Positions 1,764 to 26,098 of a stretch of 64,000 nt of DNA are shown here, piece after piece. The translations under genes and the position numbers were made by a program. The DNA lies in the sequence record NC_041917.1; one strand, 5' to 3'. Under the pieces are notes generated by a model. It was not told the DNA's origin. It worked only from the letters and a program-made list of their open reading frames with translations, and made no database searches. How positions within the stretch are numbered: position 1 is the first letter of the stretch; every line of letters begins with the position of its first letter.

Positions 1764-1879
1764 GCAGTGATCGTCTAGAGGCTTAGGACACGAAAAAGCG
1801 ATTCTTGGTTAAGAATCTTACGGCATCAATAAACTTTCATTTCACGAACGTAACGCAGGTTCGAATCCTGCTCACTGCA
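1764..1879 (+). tRNA. tRNA-Glu(UUC) interrupted by a 43-nt insertion (1793-1835)
   Basis: Acceptor GCAGTGA/TCACTGC; T-arm GCAGG-TTCGAAT-CCTGC; removing the insert gives CG|TTC-ATTTCAC-GAACG. Confidence 0.85.
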
Positions 1880-2209: not shown

Positions 2210-2335
2210 GTGGGGTTAGCTCAGTCTGGTAGAGCAGCGAAAGAAAAAACAATGGAATCTTGAAAAGGATTCTAACAGCATTATATCTTCTACTGTAAAT
2301 TCGCAGGTCGGTGAGTTCAAATCCACCATCCCACA
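2210..2335 (+). tRNA. tRNA-Tyr(GUA)-like gene interrupted by a ~51-nt insertion (2242-2292)
   Basis: Acceptor GTGGGGT/ATCCCAC; D-arm GCTC..GAGC; GCGAA|CTGTAAA-TTCGC after removal; short variable loop and bulged T-stem are atypical. Confidence 0.75.
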
Positions 2336-3412: not shown

Positions 3413-3537
3413 GGCGAGTTAGCTCAGTTGGTAGAGCACGTAGAAACCCAAGATTCAAGTACTTGAATCTTACAGCAACAATAACTCATACACTTTTAAT
3501 GTCGTGGTCGTTGGTTCGAATCCAACACTCGCCGCCA
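3413..3537 (+). tRNA. tRNA-Lys(UUU) interrupted by a 49-nt insertion (3441-3489)
   Basis: Acceptor GGCGAGT/ACTCGCC plus G-CCA; CG|ACA-CTTTTAA-TGTCG after removal; T-arm GTTGG-TTCGAAT-CCAAC. Confidence 0.9.
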
Positions 3538-6957: not shown

Positions 6958-7363
6958 AATTATTTGTGGATTTCCTGGTATAGGTAAGAGTAGTATTAAA
7001 AATATCGGCAAAGTACTTGATTTGGATAGTTCTTTGTATACCAAGAATTCTTTATTTCCTGCTAATTATATTGTTGATATTGTATCTGCAATGGATGAAT
7101 ATGATTATATTTTGGTAAGTACGCATGACGTACTTAGAAAAGAATTACAATCATTGGGTATTAGTTATACTAATGTATATCCAGAGATTGATTTAGGTGA
7201 AGAATACCACGAACGTTATGTTCAACGCGGAAGTCCTGAAAGTTTTATTAATTTTATTGATGAAAATTGGGATGACTTCATATACGAATTGCAGTATGAT
7301 GATTCTGAATATGTTGAACTGGAAAGCGGTCAATTTCTTTCAGATATTATAGCAAATATTTGA
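6950..7363 (+). CDS. P-loop kinase/NTPase
   Basis: Walker A GFPGIGKS near N-terminus, small NMP-kinase-like size. Confidence 0.7.
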   Translation: MAKIICGFPGIGKSSIKNIGKVLDLDSSLYTKNSLFPANYIVDIVSAMDEYDYILVSTHDVLRKELQSLGISYTNVYPEIDLGEEYHERYVQRGSPESFINFIDENWDDFIYELQYDDSEYVELESGQFLSDIIANI

Positions 7364-7389
7364 AACGAAAGAAAAAATTGTGGTATAAT
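7361..7389 (+). promoter_or_regulatory. TGAAAC-N17-TATAAT promoter (RNA-gene class)
   Basis: TGAAAC ... TGGTATAAT; five more copies in the window. Confidence 0.7.
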
Positions 7390-7406
7390 ATAGTACATAA
7401 GGCAAC

Positions 7407-7523
7407 GGAATCTTACAGCAAAAATACTAATTTTTGATGAAAACGAAACGACGAGGTTCGAATCCTCACCCACGAATTGCCTTATTATTAGTGGGAGCAC
7501 GGTGCTGGATAAACAAAGATTCC
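7407..7523 (+). ncRNA. ACAGCA element bracketing a degenerate permuted tRNA (Ile GAU-like)
   Basis: GGAATCTT-ACAGCA ... AAGATTCC; GAGG-TTCGAAT-CCTC precedes CCCAC..GTGGG. Confidence 0.7.
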
Positions 7524-7584
7524 AGAATTTAAGTTAGAAAATTATGAAACAAATCAAAAATTTGTGGTATAATATAAGAAGTAA

Positions 7585-7691
7585 AGCGGGATGGTGATTG
7601 ATGAAAGCTATTATTTGATTCTAGAAAATCATAATAAGTGAGTAAGAGAACAGGGTTCTTAATATCACGAGGGTTCGATCCCCTGTCGCTG
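7585..7691 (+). pseudogene. degenerate Leu(UAG)-like tRNA
   Basis: TGATT-CTAGAA-AATCA hairpin, variable-arm hairpin, AGGG-TTCGAT-CCCT; poor acceptor and D arms. Confidence 0.35.
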
Positions 7692-7706: not shown

Positions 7707-7824
7707 GAAATCTCACAGCAAACAAAACAATTTTTTTCCTTGCATAGAAAAACGGTGGGGTTCGATTCCCCAACATCCAAGTTGCTTTTAGGATGTGTCT
7801 GGAAGGCCGTATGACAAAGATTTC
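7707..7824 (+). ncRNA. ACAGCA element bracketing a degenerate permuted tRNA (Ala UGC-like)
   Basis: GAAATCT-C-ACAGCA ... AGATTTC; CTTGCAT loop, GGGG-TTCGATT-CCCC, ACATCC..GGATGT. Confidence 0.7.
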
Positions 7825-8074: not shown

Positions 8075-8079
8075 CTAAA

Positions 8080-8192
8080 GGATTCGCACAGCAACAATAA
8101 AATCTTAAAATTCAATTGGTGAAAACAACCTTGCAGTTCGATTCTGCTTCCACAATGTGTGGATCTGGTGATGGATAGAAAAAACCGAATCC
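8080..8192 (+). ncRNA. ACAGCA element bracketing a highly degenerate permuted tRNA
   Basis: GGATTCG-C-ACAGCA ... AGAAA..CGAATCC; GCAG-TTCGATT-CTGC then TCCAC-AATGT-GTGGA. Confidence 0.65.
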
Positions 8193-8231
8193 TGATTTTA
8201 ATTAAGAAGTACTAAAGAATTTGATACACAC

Positions 8232-8384
8232 GGATTTATACAGCAAACATAATCCTAAAATAAAACATACGATAATGTTACTAACTCGGAATTCGTTCCC
8301 TTCGTTAGTACTTGGCAACTTGGGTACTTAAATAAGTTGTATCACCTCACGTGTATCGGATTAGAGGTGATTATAAATAAATCC
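8232..8384 (+). ncRNA. ACAGCA element with multi-hairpin cargo
   Basis: GGATTTAT-ACAGCA ... ATAAATCC; internal GGAA-TTCG-TTCC, CAACTT/AAGTTG, ATCACCTC/GAGGTGAT. Confidence 0.65.
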
Positions 8385-8929: not shown

Positions 8930-8986
8930 GGAATCTAGCAGCAACCATAACCCAATCAAACTTTTAATTTGACAATTATGGATTCC
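8930..8986 (+). ncRNA. ACAGCA element carrying an isolated Lys(UUU) anticodon stem-loop
   Basis: GGAATCT-A-GCAGCA ... TCAAA-CTTTTAA-TTTGA ... GGATTCC. Confidence 0.75.
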
Positions 8987-11015: not shown

Positions 11016-11023
11016 AAAAGTTT

Positions 11024-11077
11024 TAGAATCTAACAGCAATCAAAACTCATTGGATATATGAAAAAAGATAGATTCTA
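11024..11077 (+). ncRNA. minimal ACAGCA element
   Basis: TAGAATCTA-ACAGCA ... TCAT-TGGATAT-ATGA ... TAGATTCTA. Confidence 0.75.
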
Positions 11078-11083
11078 GTATTT

Positions 11084-11156: not shown

Positions 11157-11255
11157 CGAAGTAGTTCAGTACTGAAAAATGTACAGTGAAATTATTCAAC
11201 ACTATAGGTAGCACTTTGAATGAATCAGTAAGCCTATAAGTAACTACAATAAATT

Positions 11256-11384
11256 TGGAATTCAACAGCAATTCACTTACTAAAAACAGCTACCTCACGG
11301 TTTGTAGGTTCAAGTCCTACCTTGTACTTTCGAGTACATGTGGTGAAAATGGTAAACACGGCTGTCCAAAAGAAATGAATTCCA
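11256..11384 (+). tRNA. circularly permuted tRNA-Leu (probably UAA) inside an ACAGCA element
   Basis: 3' half (ACAGC, variable arm, T-arm, CTTGTAC) precedes TTTCGA linker and 5' half (GTACATG, D-arm, GCTGT). Confidence 0.85.
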
Positions 11385-11436
11385 GTATTAATTAAGACAT
11401 AAATATTCTTATACACTTTTTTGTAAGGATATAATT

Positions 11437-12036: not shown

Positions 12037-12043
12037 TAAGATT

Positions 12044-12163
12044 TGGAATTCAACAGCAAATCATTCTAAACCCGTAGCATGTCGTAGGTTCAAGTCCTAC
12101 CAGTACTATCGAGTACTGTAGCTCAGTTGGTAGAGCAGCCACCTTAAAAAGAAATGAATTCCA
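12044..12163 (+). tRNA. circularly permuted class I tRNA inside an ACAGCA element (anticodon uncertain)
   Basis: GTAGC-ATGTC-T-arm-CAGTACT-ATCG-AGTACTG-TA-GCTCAGTTGGTAGAGC-A-GCCAC. Confidence 0.8.
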
Positions 12164-12194
12164 GTATTAATTAAAACAACATGAGTATAAATCA

Positions 12195-12644
12195 ATGTCT
12201 GATAAGCATCAATTTAAAGTAAACATCGGTGATTGGTCACAAGATGGTCATAATCAATATGATGTTTTAGTTCTTAACAGTACTAAACCAGTAGATGAAG
12301 TACAAAAAGCATTTAAAAAAGCTGCAACAGATTTACATTTACTAGTAAATGGTCGTTTTCTAATTGCAGATGAATTTGAAGATTGTAGTCTATCTGAAGA
12401 CCATGCAGAAGTTCTTAAAAATGCAGGTGTAAAATTTGATGATTTAGTGTATAATGATGGCGATGATGAAGAACCAAATTATATTATTGAAGGTTCAAGT
12501 GATATGACTATCCTAGTGATGCGTATCGCCCAACTTGAATTGGACTTTGAATTTGAAATTACGAATGATGCAATTCCGAACTTTAACGGGTTCTGGACAG
12601 AAGAACAAATGCCATCAATCGGATATGGTTTGTATAACATATAA
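12195..12644 (+). CDS. hypothetical protein
   Basis: ORF track. Confidence 0.75.
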   Translation: MSDKHQFKVNIGDWSQDGHNQYDVLVLNSTKPVDEVQKAFKKAATDLHLLVNGRFLIADEFEDCSLSEDHAEVLKNAGVKFDDLVYNDGDDEEPNYIIEGSSDMTILVMRIAQLELDFEFEITNDAIPNFNGFWTEEQMPSIGYGLYNI

Positions 12645-12653
12645 AACAAGTTT

Positions 12654-12718
12654 TGGAATCTAGCAGCACCCATAAAATGAAATCAACTGTTAATTGAAAA
12701 ATTCAAAAATGGATTCCA
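12654..12718 (+). ncRNA. ACAGCA element carrying an isolated Asn(GUU) anticodon stem-loop
   Basis: TGGAATCT-A-GCAGCA ... TCAA-CTGTTAA-TTGA ... GGATTCCA. Confidence 0.7.
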
Positions 12719-12738
12719 GCCTATTTCGGAGTAAAAAA

Positions 12739-13008
12739 ATGTATTATGCTCGATTAGAATATCCAAACAATGGATATGAGATTGAAAGAATACGTCTTAA
12801 AGCCTTAGATCGCAAAAAGTACTATCCAGTAGTTTCGATTGATATTGGTAGTTCAAGTACTCGCATATATCTTGAAGGTGATAAGAATGCATATAATAGT
12901 GTGAACTTTGAATTCTATACCAAACATGGTGATGAATATATTCTTGAAGATATTTTCGAAGACCCTGATTTAAACCCGTACTTGGATGATGATGACGAAG
13001 AATATTAA
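12739..13008 (+). CDS. hypothetical protein
   Basis: ATG 12739 after GGAG. Confidence 0.7.
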   Translation: MYYARLEYPNNGYEIERIRLKALDRKKYYPVVSIDIGSSSTRIYLEGDKNAYNSVNFEFYTKHGDEYILEDIFEDPDLNPYLDDDDEEY

Positions 13009-13076
13009 ATAAAAATACCACAAATAAATGAAACGCTTCAAAAAATTGTGGTATAATATAAGTAAGTTAAACAAGA

Positions 13077-13148
13077 GGTTATGTCGTATAAAGGTTATTA
13101 CGGAGAGCTGTTAACTCTTTTATCTTGGTTCGATTCCAAGCATGACCG
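13077..13148 (+). tRNA. tRNA-Asn(GUU)
   Basis: GAGAG-CTGTTAA-CTCTT; acceptor GGTTATG/CATGACC; atypical D-arm. Confidence 0.85.
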
Positions 13149-13265
13149 CAAAAAGTTAAATTCACCAGGCGTACTATGGTGGGAAAGGTATCATGATACC
13201 AATTCGAATAGAATACGTATTAAACCCTTGAACGGTTTTCTGTAAACTCAATTTAACAAATAATT

Positions 13266-13320
13266 AAGAATCTAACAGCAATAAAAACTCATTCGATTAT
13301 ATGAAAAAAGATAGATTCTT
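13266..13320 (+). ncRNA. minimal ACAGCA element
   Basis: AAGAATCTA-ACAGCA ... TAGATTCTT; near copy of 11024-11077. Confidence 0.75.
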
Positions 13321-13325
13321 GTTTT

Positions 13326-14084: not shown

Positions 14085-14141
14085 AAGAATCCAGCAGCAA
14101 CTAAAACTCATTCGCTTAATATGAAAAAGAAACGGATTCTT
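14085..14141 (+). ncRNA. minimal ACAGCA element
   Basis: AAGAATCC-A-GCAGCA ... AGAAA-C-GGATTCTT. Confidence 0.75.
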
Positions 14142-16621: not shown

Positions 16622-17047
16622 ATGAATGTATTTGAAACGTGTTTTTTATATGCAAGTGATGGTAACCAAAATAAAACAATTCGAAGTGTAGATGATGACA
16701 AAGCTCTATTCATGTACAAAGTCATAACCGAATATGATTCTTCAATTGAACAAAATGTGTGTATTTTAATGATTACCATATTTGAGGCCAGTGAAACATT
16801 AATATTTGCCTTTGGTATATCTGAACAATATCCAGATATTGGAATTTCAATTATGAAAGTACAAGGTAATAAAACCTTACATTGCAGTGATGTAAGTACT
16901 GTAGAAGATTTAGAAGCACGTTTGTTTCAATTGGAAACAGTAGTTGATGTATATGATTTAGATACTTCTTTATTGGATAAAATGAATATTATTCGTGAAG
17001 TATTTTTAAATAAAAAAGATGAAACGGTGCTGAATAATCTGGTATAA
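16622..17047 (+). CDS. hypothetical protein (EExxFQ family)
   Basis: EARLFQLET. Confidence 0.7.
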   Translation: MNVFETCFLYASDGNQNKTIRSVDDDKALFMYKVITEYDSSIEQNVCILMITIFEASETLIFAFGISEQYPDIGISIMKVQGNKTLHCSDVSTVEDLEARLFQLETVVDVYDLDTSLLDKMNIIREVFLNKKDETVLNNLV

Positions 17048-17070
17048 TATCAGTACCTTAGAAAGAAATT

Positions 17071-25975: not shown

Positions 25976-26098
25976 ATTTTTCTCCTTTTTATATTTATAA
26001 AAAGATTCAAGATTTAGGTTCGAAATCGGTATCTATAAAAAATGAAAAAAATTTGAAACGGTAGGAAAAAATGTGGTATAATATACACATAAAGAAAT

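What the first reader, a model, noticed from the sequence alone, without database searches (positions are those of the whole stretch)
12654..12718. Stand-alone Asn(GUU) anticodon stem-loop inside an element
Seen: TCAA-CTGTTAA-TTGA (12683-12697) with a canonical CU-GUU-AA loop, bracketed by TGGAATCT-A-GCAGCA and GGATTCCA. It is a second, independent anticodon-only cargo, which makes chance unlikely. Established: G-U-N anticodons (Asn, Asp, His, Tyr) are colicin E5 targets and queuosine substrates. Inference: decoy or modification substrate.
Basis: partly seen in the sequence, partly recalled or inferred. Interest (0 to 1): 0.68.

Follow-up and report, generated by a model that had tools for sequence, protein, structure and literature searches.

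The report
Phage small RNA showing asparagine anticodon loop
The hairpin is real and is the only cargo of a conserved 67-base small-RNA element in a giant Serratia phage. The element belongs to a large, apparently undescribed family of phage RNAs that share a docking "handle", occur together with a Ro60-like protein gene, and often display copies of tRNA anticodon loops, here that of asparagine tRNA.

Summary
**Verdict:** The window comes from Serratia phage BF.

**The element (12653-12719)**
- It has a 9-bp closing stem, a single-stranded AG-CAGCAC motif, and a 4-bp hairpin.
- The hairpin's 7-nt loop, CUGUUAA, equals the anticodon loop of the phage's own tRNA-Asn.
- About 8 such hairpins per strand are expected by chance in this window.

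**Why it still counts**
- It is one of 14 copies of a stem-plus-ACAGCAA family, all in the tRNA region.
- It is far better conserved than its flanks across two phage genera.
- The same loop sits on at least five different stems in family members of unrelated phages.
- Across the family, CU-NNN-AA loops are strongly enriched, and position 34 avoids A, as in real tRNAs.

**The likely partner protein**
- The handle co-occurs with DUF2828/vWA genes in both search directions.
- BF's copy of that protein folds like Ro60.

**Best reading:** a Y-RNA-like partner RNA that presents an Asn anticodon-loop mimic. Expression, protein binding and any decoy role are untested. The colicin-E5/queuosine reasoning is not favoured, because Lys and Thr loops dominate the family. 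The scan had already noted this family on other DNA.

The parts
12653..12719 (+). Whole element: a small structured RNA of the stem-ACAGCAA family, lying in the gap between BF_0454 and BF_0455.
   Evidence: Conserved at 84-90% in CBB, GAP32, XbC2, Kaldavass and Yen9-04, while the flanks do not align.
12653..12661 (+). Closing stem, 5' strand (UUGGAAUCU).
   Evidence: Pairs with 12711-12719. 95% of cells are paired across 9 sequences and 2 pairs show compensatory changes. Ensemble pairing probability is 0.58-1.0.
12662..12676 (+). Handle motif: AG-CAGCAC followed by CCAUAAA. This is a variant of the family's (A/U)CAGCAA signature, with C instead of A at the last position.
   Evidence: The same motif sits next to the 5' strand of the stem in all family copies.
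12683..12697 (+). Cargo hairpin: 4-bp stem UCAA/UUGA with the 7-nt loop CUGUUAA (12687-12693). The loop is identical to the tRNA-Asn(GUU) anticodon loop.
   Evidence: Invariant in 7 copies from 6 phages. Two stem pairs co-vary against the Lys-type copies. The same loop occurs in the phage tRNA-Asn. The hairpin is thermodynamically weak, with ensemble probability about 0.01.
12711..12719 (+). Closing stem, 3' strand (GGAUUCCAG), ending in the family's CC-N-G tail.
8930..8986 (+). Closest paralogue: the same handle, with a cargo hairpin UCAAA/UUUGA and loop CUUUUAA (Lys UUU).
11023..11078 (+). Short family copy with a different cargo (CUCAUU...AUGA), 6 nt upstream of tRNA-Ile.
13265..13321 (+). 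Short family copy just upstream of tRNA-Gln.
14085..14141 (+). Short family copy. Yen9-04 carries an Asn-type cargo at this site instead.
7407..7523 (+). Long family copy whose stem encloses a T-arm and further hairpins.
7707..7824 (+). Long family copy with a co-varying stem (GAAAUCU/AGAUUUC). The end coordinate is approximate.
8079..8193 (+). Long family copy with a co-varying stem (GGAUUCG/CGAAUCC).
8232..8384 (+). Further long family copy (stem GGAUUUAU/AUAAAUCC), found only in the whole-genome scan.
11255..11385 (+). Family copy whose cargo is a circularly permuted tRNA-like domain.
12043..12164 (+). Family copy whose cargo is a permuted tRNA-like domain: T-arm, closed acceptor stem, D-arm.
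   Evidence: Sub-threshold Rfam YrlA match at 12077-12139 (40.3 bits, E 3e-7). Fold.
1764..1879 (+). tRNA-like gene with the same module (hairpin plus ACGGCAU) inserted in the anticodon arm.
2210..2335 (+). tRNA-like gene with the module inserted before a CUGUAAA loop.
3413..3537 (+). tRNA-Lys-like gene with the module inserted. The sequence from its ACAGCAA motif through the CUUUUAA loop aligns by eye with the cargo of 8930-8986, suggesting common descent.
13077..13149 (+). Genuine phage tRNA-Asn(GUU) with anticodon arm GAGAG-CUGUUAA-CUCUU. It lies downstream of the element in every relative examined.
   Evidence: Synteny.

Best explanation
Positions 12653-12719 encode a small structured RNA of a phage family that works like the Y RNAs of Ro60.

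**Handle.** A 9-bp closing stem plus the adjacent single-stranded (A/U)CAGCAA-type motif form a constant handle. The inference is that the handle docks onto the phage's Ro60-like protein: BF_0180, a DUF2828 ring plus a vWA domain, encoded 200 kb away.

**Cargo.** The variable interior of this copy is reduced to one hairpin, whose 7-nt loop CUGUUAA copies the anticodon loop of tRNA-Asn(GUU). The particle would therefore present an Asn anticodon-loop mimic to some factor that reads tRNA anticodon loops.

**Maturation.** The RNA is probably cut out of the long transcripts of the tRNA region.

**Shown:**
- the element, its stem, and its membership of the family;
- its conservation;
- recurrence of the same loop on different stems;
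- the genomic link between handle RNAs and DUF2828 genes;
- the Ro60 fold of the protein.

**Inferred:** transcription and processing, RNA-protein binding, and what the displayed loop engages.
For: **Family in BF.** There are 14 copies, all on the + strand at window 1.8-14.2 kb, with compensatory changes in the closing stem between paralogues.

**Conservation.** The element is 84-90% identical in CBB, GAP32, XbC2, Kaldavass and Yen9-04, and the flanks do not align. With the stem-plus-hairpin structure, 96.6% of cells are paired and 4 pairs change on both sides.

**Anticodon-loop cargo across the family**
- 14 of 62 distinct short elements carry a CU-NNN-AA loop on a stem of at least 4 bp, against 0.19 expected from shuffles. 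Only 1.3% of all 7-nt-loop hairpins in the same loci have such a loop.
- In a sample chosen by the handle alone, 30 of 74 elements do.
- Among 45 distinct anticodon-like hairpins, position 34 is T 22, G 17, C 5, A 1, although the cargo is 45% A.

**The Asn loop specifically.** It recurs on UCAA, CAGA, UAUGA, UUGC and UUUCA stems. 8 of the 9 hits with a real closing stem show it as a hairpin loop.

**Link to the protein**
- In 80 loci fetched by the DUF2828 protein, there are 91 stem-plus-ACAGCAA hits on the gene strand, against 15-36 for control 7-mers. 37 of 78 lie 0-1 kb upstream of the gene.
- Of 48 viral records chosen by the RNA pattern alone, 26 encode DUF2828, including 5 of the 7 complete ones.

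**The protein itself**
- BF_0180 matches DUF2828 plus DUF7788/vWA.
- Its AlphaFold model has pLDDT 88.6.
- The 12 best PDB matches are all Ro60/TROVE chains, with E from 4e-9 and TM about 0.58 over the full length.
- The nearest ESM clusters are TROVE plus vWA_Ro60.
- Homologues in mycobacteriophages are annotated 'Ro-like RNA binding protein'.

**Position in tRNA arrays.** Short elements sit 4-10 nt from flanking tRNA genes, in the kind of slot a tRNA gene would occupy.
Against: - No RNA data exist for this phage, so expression and the RNA ends are unknown.
- The hairpin has only 4 pairs, 3 of them A-U. Its ensemble probability is about 0.01. The MFE fold instead pairs GCAG of the motif (12663-12666) with CUGU of the loop (12687-12690), and UUGAA with UUCAA. 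The same alternative is predicted for the one Yen9-04 copy folded.
- This copy's motif ends in C, not A.
- The DUF2828 gene is 200 kb away in BF, and its own leader has no handle.
- About half of the RNA-selected records lack DUF2828. Most of those are fragments, but two are essentially complete.
- At the orthologous site Yen9-03 has a Lys-type cargo with loop CAUUUAA, which breaks U33.
- Sequence profiles do not link DUF2828 to TROVE.
Confidence: 0.6

Rival explanations
1. One reading: the displayed loop is a decoy or sponge for a host anticodon-loop nuclease that cuts tRNA-Asn (colicin-E5-like), or a substrate that ties up a modification enzyme such as tRNA-guanine transglycosylase. This refines the best explanation rather than excluding it.
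For: - The loop is identical to the tRNA-Asn loop and contains U33-G34-U35.
- The family displays many loops, most often Lys UUU, and also Tyr GUA. From my own knowledge, tRNA-Lys(UUU) is the classic target of PrrC and PARIS.
- In BF the partner gene lies among an RNA ligase, a 2H phosphoesterase and a CCA-adding enzyme, a set that looks like tRNA repair.
- From my own knowledge, colicin E5 and TGT both accept anticodon minihelices in vitro.
Against: - Nothing here tests it.
- The anticodon spectrum is broad (Thr UGU, Ser UGA, Cys GCA, Arg UCU, Met CAU) and not limited to G-U-N or to known nuclease targets.
- The RNA-repair neighbourhood is absent from three other DUF2828 contigs.
- The hairpin is weak.
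- A stoichiometric decoy would need to be very abundant.
Confidence: 0.2
2. The anticodon look is incidental. The element functions through its alternative fold (the CAG of the motif paired with the CUG of the loop, plus a UUGAA/UUCAA hairpin), for example as a processing signal or as a cis element in the BF_0454-BF_0455 mRNA.
For: - The MFE of -11.3 kcal/mol uses that fold, against -6.4 for the stem plus the anticodon-like hairpin.
- The downstream UCAA that allows the alternative hairpin is present in all seven Asn-type copies of the BF group.
- The element lies between two protein genes, 8 nt upstream of a GGAG ribosome-binding site.
Against: - The alternative pairing is impossible in Lys-type copies, and in the Asn-type elements of other phages that have different stems.
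- The gene downstream of the element differs between relatives: a small ORF, an HNH endonuclease gene, or tRNA-Asn directly.
- The family-wide enrichment of canonical loops and the avoidance of A at position 34 are not explained.
Confidence: 0.1
3. A decaying remnant of a module-bearing tRNA gene (such as the one at 3413-3537), with no function of its own.
For: - The cargo of the Lys-type paralogue appears related by descent to the anticodon region of the tRNA-Lys-like gene at 3413-3537.
- The Asn loop differs from the Lys loop by one base.
- Avoidance of A at position 34 could simply be inherited.
Against: - The element is conserved well above its flanks in two genera, and the hairpin is invariant in 7 copies.
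- In other phages the stems have diverged completely while the loops stay canonical.
- The elements occupy regular slots in tRNA arrays.
Confidence: 0.06
4. A DNA-level element, such as a homing-endonuclease target or a recombination site.
For: - HNH endonuclease genes (annotated as such in Kaldavass and in one Yen9-04 record; unnamed in XbC2) start about 10-30 nt after the element.
- Cargo types are swapped between orthologous sites.
Against: - Compensatory changes keep the helices paired.
- All copies lie on one strand.
- The cargo is tRNA-like.
- Homing genes commonly settle beside conserved functional sequence, so their presence does not explain why the element is conserved.
Confidence: 0.04

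Closest known systems
Bacterial Y RNAs, especially YrlA (Rfam RF02553), partners of Ro60/Rsr (PMC4201824)
   Same: - A terminal stem with a nearby single-stranded protein-binding motif.
- A variable module that imitates tRNA.
- A ring-plus-vWA protein partner.
- Two paralogues in this window (11255-11385 and 12043-12164) carry a permuted tRNA-like domain; the one at 12043-12164 matches the YrlA model at sub-threshold score.
   Different: - The Rsr motif GNCGAA(N0-1)G is absent, and the phage has no TROVE gene.
- The partner is DUF2828, related to Ro60 by fold only.
- This copy has no T-arm, D-arm or acceptor mimic, only an anticodon-type hairpin, a cargo that the one YrlA paper consulted here (PMC4201824) does not describe for Y RNAs.
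Class I RNAs of dictyostelid amoebae (Rfam RF01414; PMC7919456)
   Same: - 42-65 nt long, with a short stem joining the 5' and 3' ends.
- A conserved 11-nt motif right after the 5' strand. Its near-invariant positions fit ..U..C..CAA, as in the phage CUUACAGCAA.
- A variable interior and a C-U-G-type 3' end.
- A long paralogue gave a weak RF01414 match.
   Different: - Eukaryotic, with its own promoter element, and reported as unique to dictyostelids.
- Its known binding protein is an RRM protein.
- This copy does not match the model even at E 10.
- No anticodon-like cargo is described for Class I RNAs.
tRNA-Asn(GUU) anticodon stem-loop
   Same: An identical 7-nt loop, CUGUUAA, with U33, G34-U35-U36 and A37-A38.
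   Different: - The stem has 4 A/U-rich pairs plus an A.A mismatch, instead of 5 pairs.
- There is no cloverleaf. ARAGORN and the Rfam tRNA model do not call it.
Phage tRNA genes used against tRNA-cutting host defences
   Same: It is encoded within a phage tRNA array and imitates the part of a tRNA that anticodon nucleases attack.
   Different: It cannot decode. It would act, if at all, as a mimic held on a protein, not as a replacement tRNA. This comparison rests on my own knowledge of the field, not on a test made here.

Membership tests
Stem-ACAGCAA phage RNAs (uncatalogued; defined in this scan) | A closing stem of at least 7 bp joining the two ends. | tested here: met
   9 pairs, 12653-12661 with 12711-12719.
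Stem-ACAGCAA phage RNAs (uncatalogued; defined in this scan) | An (A/U)CAGCAA motif 1-3 nt after the 5' strand of the stem. | tested here: met
   AG-CAGCAC in BF, where the last base is C. Orthologues have AGCAGCAA or AACAGCAA.
Stem-ACAGCAA phage RNAs (uncatalogued; defined in this scan) | The 3' strand ends in CC-N-G. | tested here: met
   GGAUUCCAG. Other phages have AUCCUG.
Stem-ACAGCAA phage RNAs (uncatalogued; defined in this scan) | The genome encodes a DUF2828/vWA protein. | tested here: met
   BF_0180. The association holds in both directions.
Stem-ACAGCAA phage RNAs (uncatalogued; defined in this scan) | Made as a discrete RNA and bound by the protein. | not testable with these tools
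   No RNA runs exist for this phage.
YrlA / bacterial Y RNA (RF02553) | A tRNA-like domain with T-arm, D-arm and closed acceptor stem. | tested here: not met
   This element has only one hairpin, and no YrlA match was found at E up to 10.
YrlA / bacterial Y RNA (RF02553) | The Rsr-binding motif GNCGAA(N0-1)G near the 5' end (PMC4201824). | tested here: not met
   Absent from 12653-12719.
YrlA / bacterial Y RNA (RF02553) | Encoded with a TROVE-domain Ro60/Rsr gene. | tested here: not met
   No PF05731 match in the whole phage genome.
tRNA (RF00005) | A cloverleaf recognised by ARAGORN or the Rfam tRNA model. | tested here: not met
   No call at this place.
Dictyostelid Class I RNA (RF01414) | A match to the covariance model. 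| tested here: not met
   No match at E up to 10. Only the long paralogue at 7707 gave 24.3 bits, against a gathering score of 41.5.
Dictyostelid Class I RNA (RF01414) | A terminal stem plus an 11-nt motif with near-invariant U3, C6, C9, A10 and A11. | tested here: inconclusive
   The stem is present. UCUAGCAGCAC fits 4 of the 5 positions.
Ro60/TROVE proteins (for the proposed partner, BF_0180) | A Ro60 fold: helical ring plus a C-terminal vWA domain. | tested here: met
   The Foldseek top 12 are all Ro60/TROVE chains, E from 4e-9, TM 0.40-0.59. vWA HMM hits.
Ro60/TROVE proteins (for the proposed partner, BF_0180) | A match to the Pfam TROVE model, or to Ro60 by sequence. | tested here: not met

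The most novel reading that the evidence does not exclude
Phage Ro60-like particles carry interchangeable RNA 'baits' that copy the anticodon loops of particular tRNAs (Lys, Thr, Asn, Tyr and others). They use these baits to capture, neutralise or sense host enzymes that cut or modify those loops. This would be a modular, RNA-programmed counter-defence built into tRNA arrays, and the element here would be its asparagine bait.
Probability: 0.2. Interest if true: 0.9.

Novelty: new variant of a known kind. Interest (0 to 1): 0.66.

Why it matters
**A second branch of the Ro60/Y-RNA system.** If the reading holds, Ro60/Y-RNA-type particles have a large unrecognised branch in phages. The protein occurs in 711 phage genome records and has more than 7,500 database relatives.

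**Possible link to tRNA-targeting immunity.** The RNA partners are built to show tRNA parts, down to a bare anticodon loop. That would tie an old puzzle, what Y RNAs and their tRNA-like domains are for, to the current field of tRNA-targeting bacterial immunity.

**Simple experiments follow.** The system can be tested with pull-downs, handle mutants, and plating on hosts with tRNA-cutting defences.

**An explanation for odd annotations.** It would account for the many 'pseudo-tRNA' calls in jumbo-phage tRNA regions.

**A lead on amoebal Class I RNAs.** It hints at what the similarly built Class I RNAs of social amoebae might bind.

Tried and rejected
**Searches that found nothing**
- Rfam at gathering and at relaxed thresholds: nothing meaningful on the element itself.
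- Expression: no RNA run holds this phage. The contigs I laid on the region show only that the DNA is present.
- TROVE and RtcB family searches of the phage genome: both negative.
- Single-sequence and profile searches of DUF2828 against PDB sequences: no Ro60. The relation appears only at the level of fold.
- Literature: no paper links DUF2828 or ACAGCAA to phage RNAs.

**Ideas tested and dropped**
- A handle in the leader of BF's own DUF2828 gene: none.
- An RNA-repair neighbourhood as a general feature of DUF2828 genes: not seen in three other contigs.
- A rule linking the displayed anticodon to the neighbouring tRNA gene: none across 19 loci. Only the BF group keeps the Asn element upstream of tRNA-Asn.
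- A sigma-70 promoter or intrinsic terminator reading of the element: no support.

**Technical notes**
- My first stem detector was too permissive, with a 16-30% background, and I tightened it.
- One energy calculation used stem pairs mis-registered by one base. I redid it.
- No covariance model was built; pattern scans plus scripts were enough.

Full report
**Where the window lies.** The window is the right end of Serratia phage BF, a 357-kb jumbo phage of the genus Eneladusvirus. Window position 1 is record position 293155. The first 26 kb hold 21-23 tRNA genes scattered among small ORFs. The finding lies in the 94-nt gap between BF_0454 (12195-12644) and BF_0455 (12739-13008).

**The observation.** The bracket is a 9-bp helix, 12653-12661 with 12711-12719, with a U.G pair at each end. 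Inside it are AG-CAGCAC-CCAUAAA, then a hairpin UCAA / CUGUUAA / UUGA at 12683-12697, then an A-rich linker.

The hairpin alone is not remarkable. Shuffles of the window give about 8 hairpins per strand with a stem of at least 4 bp and a CT-NNN-AA loop, and 11 occur outside tRNA genes. It is also thermodynamically weak. Its ensemble probability is about 0.01. The minimum-energy fold instead pairs GCAG of the motif with CUGU of the loop, and UUGAA with UUCAA. So the case has to rest on context and comparison.

**A repeat family in the tRNA region.**
- The 5' part of the element is one of 9 copies of a 21-nt repeat (family D5). Pattern and whole-genome scans raise this to 14 copies, all on the + strand between window 1.8 and 14.2 kb.
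- Each copy has a helix followed by N-A-CAGCAA. The helix sequence changes between copies with both strands changing together (GGAAUCU/AGAUUCC, GAAAUCU/AGAUUUC, GGAUUCG/CGAAUCC, GGAAUUC/GAAUUCC), which indicates a helix maintained at the RNA level.
- The interior varies:
  - Two copies hold a circularly permuted tRNA-like domain; the copy at 12043-12164 gives a sub-threshold YrlA match.
  - Four long copies hold a T-arm and other hairpins.
  - Three copies sit inside otherwise complete tRNA-like genes.
  - Five copies are short. The finding and 8930-8986 are the two short copies whose only cargo is an anticodon-type hairpin.
- Those two are paralogues, so they are not independent. The Lys-type cargo appears related by descent to the anticodon region of the module-bearing tRNA-Lys-like gene at 3413-3537.

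**Conservation.**
- The element is found at 84-90% identity in Pectobacterium phage CBB, Cronobacter phage GAP32, Xanthomonas phage XbC2, Erwinia phage Kaldavass and Yersinia phage fHe-Yen9-04 (two copies). The flanks cannot be aligned.
- The hairpin is invariant in all seven Asn-type copies.
- On the 9-sequence alignment the stem-plus-hairpin structure has 96.6% of cells paired. Four pairs change on both sides, and no shuffle or slid register comes near.
- Sites exchange cargo. Yen9-03 has a Lys-type cargo with loop CAUUUAA where BF has the Asn type. Yen9-04 has an Asn type where BF has the element at 14085-14141.
- In this group the Asn element always lies upstream of the real tRNA-Asn gene. 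The gap is 55 nt in GAP32. In the others an ORF or an HNH endonuclease gene lies between.
- The phage tRNA-Asn has the same loop on a different stem.

**The protein lead, tested here.** Earlier notes of this scan said that such RNAs partner a Ro60-like DUF2828 protein. I treated that as a lead and tested it.
- The phage has no TROVE gene. It does encode BF_0180, which matches DUF2828 plus DUF7788 with weak vWA hits.
- I fetched 80 viral loci by that protein. In them, stem-plus-ACAGCAA occurs 91 times on the gene strand, against 15-36 for control 7-mers. 37 of 78 hits lie within 1 kb upstream of the gene, often as a ~55-nt element 47-140 nt before the start.
- In the reverse direction, I chose 48 viral records only by an RNA pattern (TAGGAT, CAGCAA, ATCCTG with gaps). 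26 of them encode DUF2828, and 5 of the 7 essentially complete records do.
- An AlphaFold model of BF_0180 has pLDDT 88.6 and pTM 0.87. Its 12 best PDB matches are all Ro60/TROVE structures, from frog, human, Deinococcus and a Thermus phage, at E from 4e-9 and TM about 0.58 over the full length.
- A language-model search gave TROVE plus vWA_Ro60 clusters as nearest neighbours.
- PHROGs names the family 'RNA-binding protein', and mycobacteriophage homologues are annotated 'Ro-like RNA binding protein'.
- Sequence profiles do not connect the two families.
- Physical binding of RNA to protein remains an inference.

**Is the anticodon look real?** Yes, at the level of the family.
- Among 62 distinct short elements near DUF2828 genes, 14 have a CU-NNN-AA loop on a stem of at least 4 bp. 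Shuffled cargo gives 0.19, with a maximum of 2 in 300 trials. Only 1.3% of all 7-nt-loop hairpins in the same loci have such a loop.
- In the independent, handle-selected sample, 30 of 74 do. Lys UUU appears on six different stems.
- Pooling gives 45 distinct anticodon-like hairpins. Position 34 is T 22, G 17, C 5, A 1, although the cargo is 45% A and 10% G. Positions 32, 37 and 38 are mostly C, A and A. This is the bias of real tRNA anticodon loops.
- For Asn specifically, a scan for CAGCAA, CTGTTAA and ATCCTG gave 104 distinct hits, mostly chance. Of the 9 with a genuine closing stem, 8 show CTGTTAA as a 7-nt loop. One of these (L276) is a tRNA-Asn-like 3' half rather than a closed element. 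The other seven use four different stems, which with the BF type makes five: UCAA, CAGA, UAUGA, UUGC and UUUCA.
- Stems that have diverged completely around an unchanged loop argue for selection on the loop, not mere descent from a tRNA.

**Setting.**
- In other phages the short elements occupy slots in tRNA arrays, 4-10 nt from the flanking tRNA genes. Processing of the neighbouring tRNAs would release them.
- No rule links the displayed anticodon to the neighbouring tRNA, and most of the tRNA-rich loci examined also carry a real tRNA with the displayed anticodon.
- In BF the partner gene lies among an RNA ligase, a 2H phosphoesterase and a CCA-adding enzyme. This recalls the bacterial Ro60/Y-RNA/RtcB operon (PMC7790460, abstract only). 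The neighbourhood was not seen in three other contigs.

**Mechanism.**
- I commit to a Y-RNA-like partner RNA. The stem plus the CAGCA motif is the docking handle for the Ro60-like protein, and the CUGUUAA hairpin is the displayed module, an Asn anticodon-loop mimic.
- What it engages is open. A decoy or bait for anticodon-loop nucleases or modification enzymes is attractive but untested.
- The alternative fold that hides both the motif and the loop could be a free-RNA state that opens when protein binds, or it could mean the loop is not displayed in this copy. Probing would tell.

**Comparison with known systems.**
- The closest known systems are the bacterial Y RNAs (YrlA) with Ro60/Rsr (PMC4201824) and the Class I RNAs of dictyostelids (PMC7919456).
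- Class I RNAs share the end stem, an 11-nt motif ending in CAGCAA, the length and the C-U-G-type 3' end.
- The element fails the membership tests for YrlA, tRNA and Class I RNA.
- I found no paper describing these phage RNAs or their link to DUF2828.
- The scan itself has reported the family before, on other DNA and on other copies in this window.
- This report adds the Asn class with its five stems, the reciprocal RNA-to-protein test, the position-34 statistic, the fold match, and the caveat of the alternative fold.

Noticed in passing
window 8232-8384: A further 153-nt family copy (stem GGATTTAT/ATAAATCC, ACAGCAA motif, tail AG). The repeat finder missed it; it turned up only in my whole-genome stem scan.
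   Followed up: partly
phage record 99795-107462 (outside the window; locus L098): The Ro60-like gene BF_0180 sits in a block that looks like RNA repair. BF_0178 is an RNA ligase (PF09414 plus an OB domain), BF_0183 a 2H phosphoesterase, BF_0186 a ribosome hibernation factor, and BF_0188 a CCA-adding enzyme.
   Followed up: partly
L010 14449-14946; L013 493-881; L014 491-879: In Yen9-04, XbC2 and Kaldavass an ORF starts about 10-30 nt after the Asn-type element; it is annotated as an HNH endonuclease in Kaldavass and in one Yen9-04 record and is unnamed in XbC2. It looks as if homing genes use the conserved element as a landing place.
   Followed up: no
L015 401-485 (Yersinia phage fHe-Yen9-03): At the site orthologous to the finding, this phage has a Lys-type cargo whose loop reads CATTTAA, so the otherwise universal U33 is replaced by A.
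   Followed up: no
window 12663-12666 with 12687-12690, and 12694-12698 with 12702-12706: There is a conserved alternative fold. The CAG of the handle motif can pair with the CUG of the 'anticodon' loop, and the 3' strand of the hairpin can pair with a downstream UCAA. The downstream UCAA is present in all seven Asn-type copies of the BF group. This may be a switch.
   Followed up: partly
window 7354-7401, 7538-7585, 13022-13069, 17013-17060, 26047-26094: Five copies of a strong sigma-70-type promoter (TGAAAC, then a spacer, then TGGTATAAT). They probably drive the tRNA and small-RNA transcription units. The copy at 13022 lies just before tRNA-Asn.
   Followed up: no
window 13077-13149: ARAGORN and Rfam call a good tRNA-Asn(GUU) here. 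The GenBank record of BF lists it as 'tRNA-OTHER / pseudo', while close relatives annotate it as tRNA-Asn.
   Followed up: partly
L276 (minus strand, about 7085-7155): A tRNA-Asn-like 3' half (anticodon arm, T-arm) preceded by a hairpin that has CAGCAA in its loop. It may be another way of joining the motif to a tRNA body.
   Followed up: no
L105 11712-11789 and L160 9189-9270: ARAGORN calls tRNAs with four-base anticodons (tttg, caag) in two unrelated phage tRNA arrays that also hold family elements. L105 also has a tRNA with anticodon tca.
   Followed up: no
L047 201-258: A family element that displays the loop CTTCAAC, i.e. anticodon UCA, which would read the UGA stop codon.
   Followed up: no
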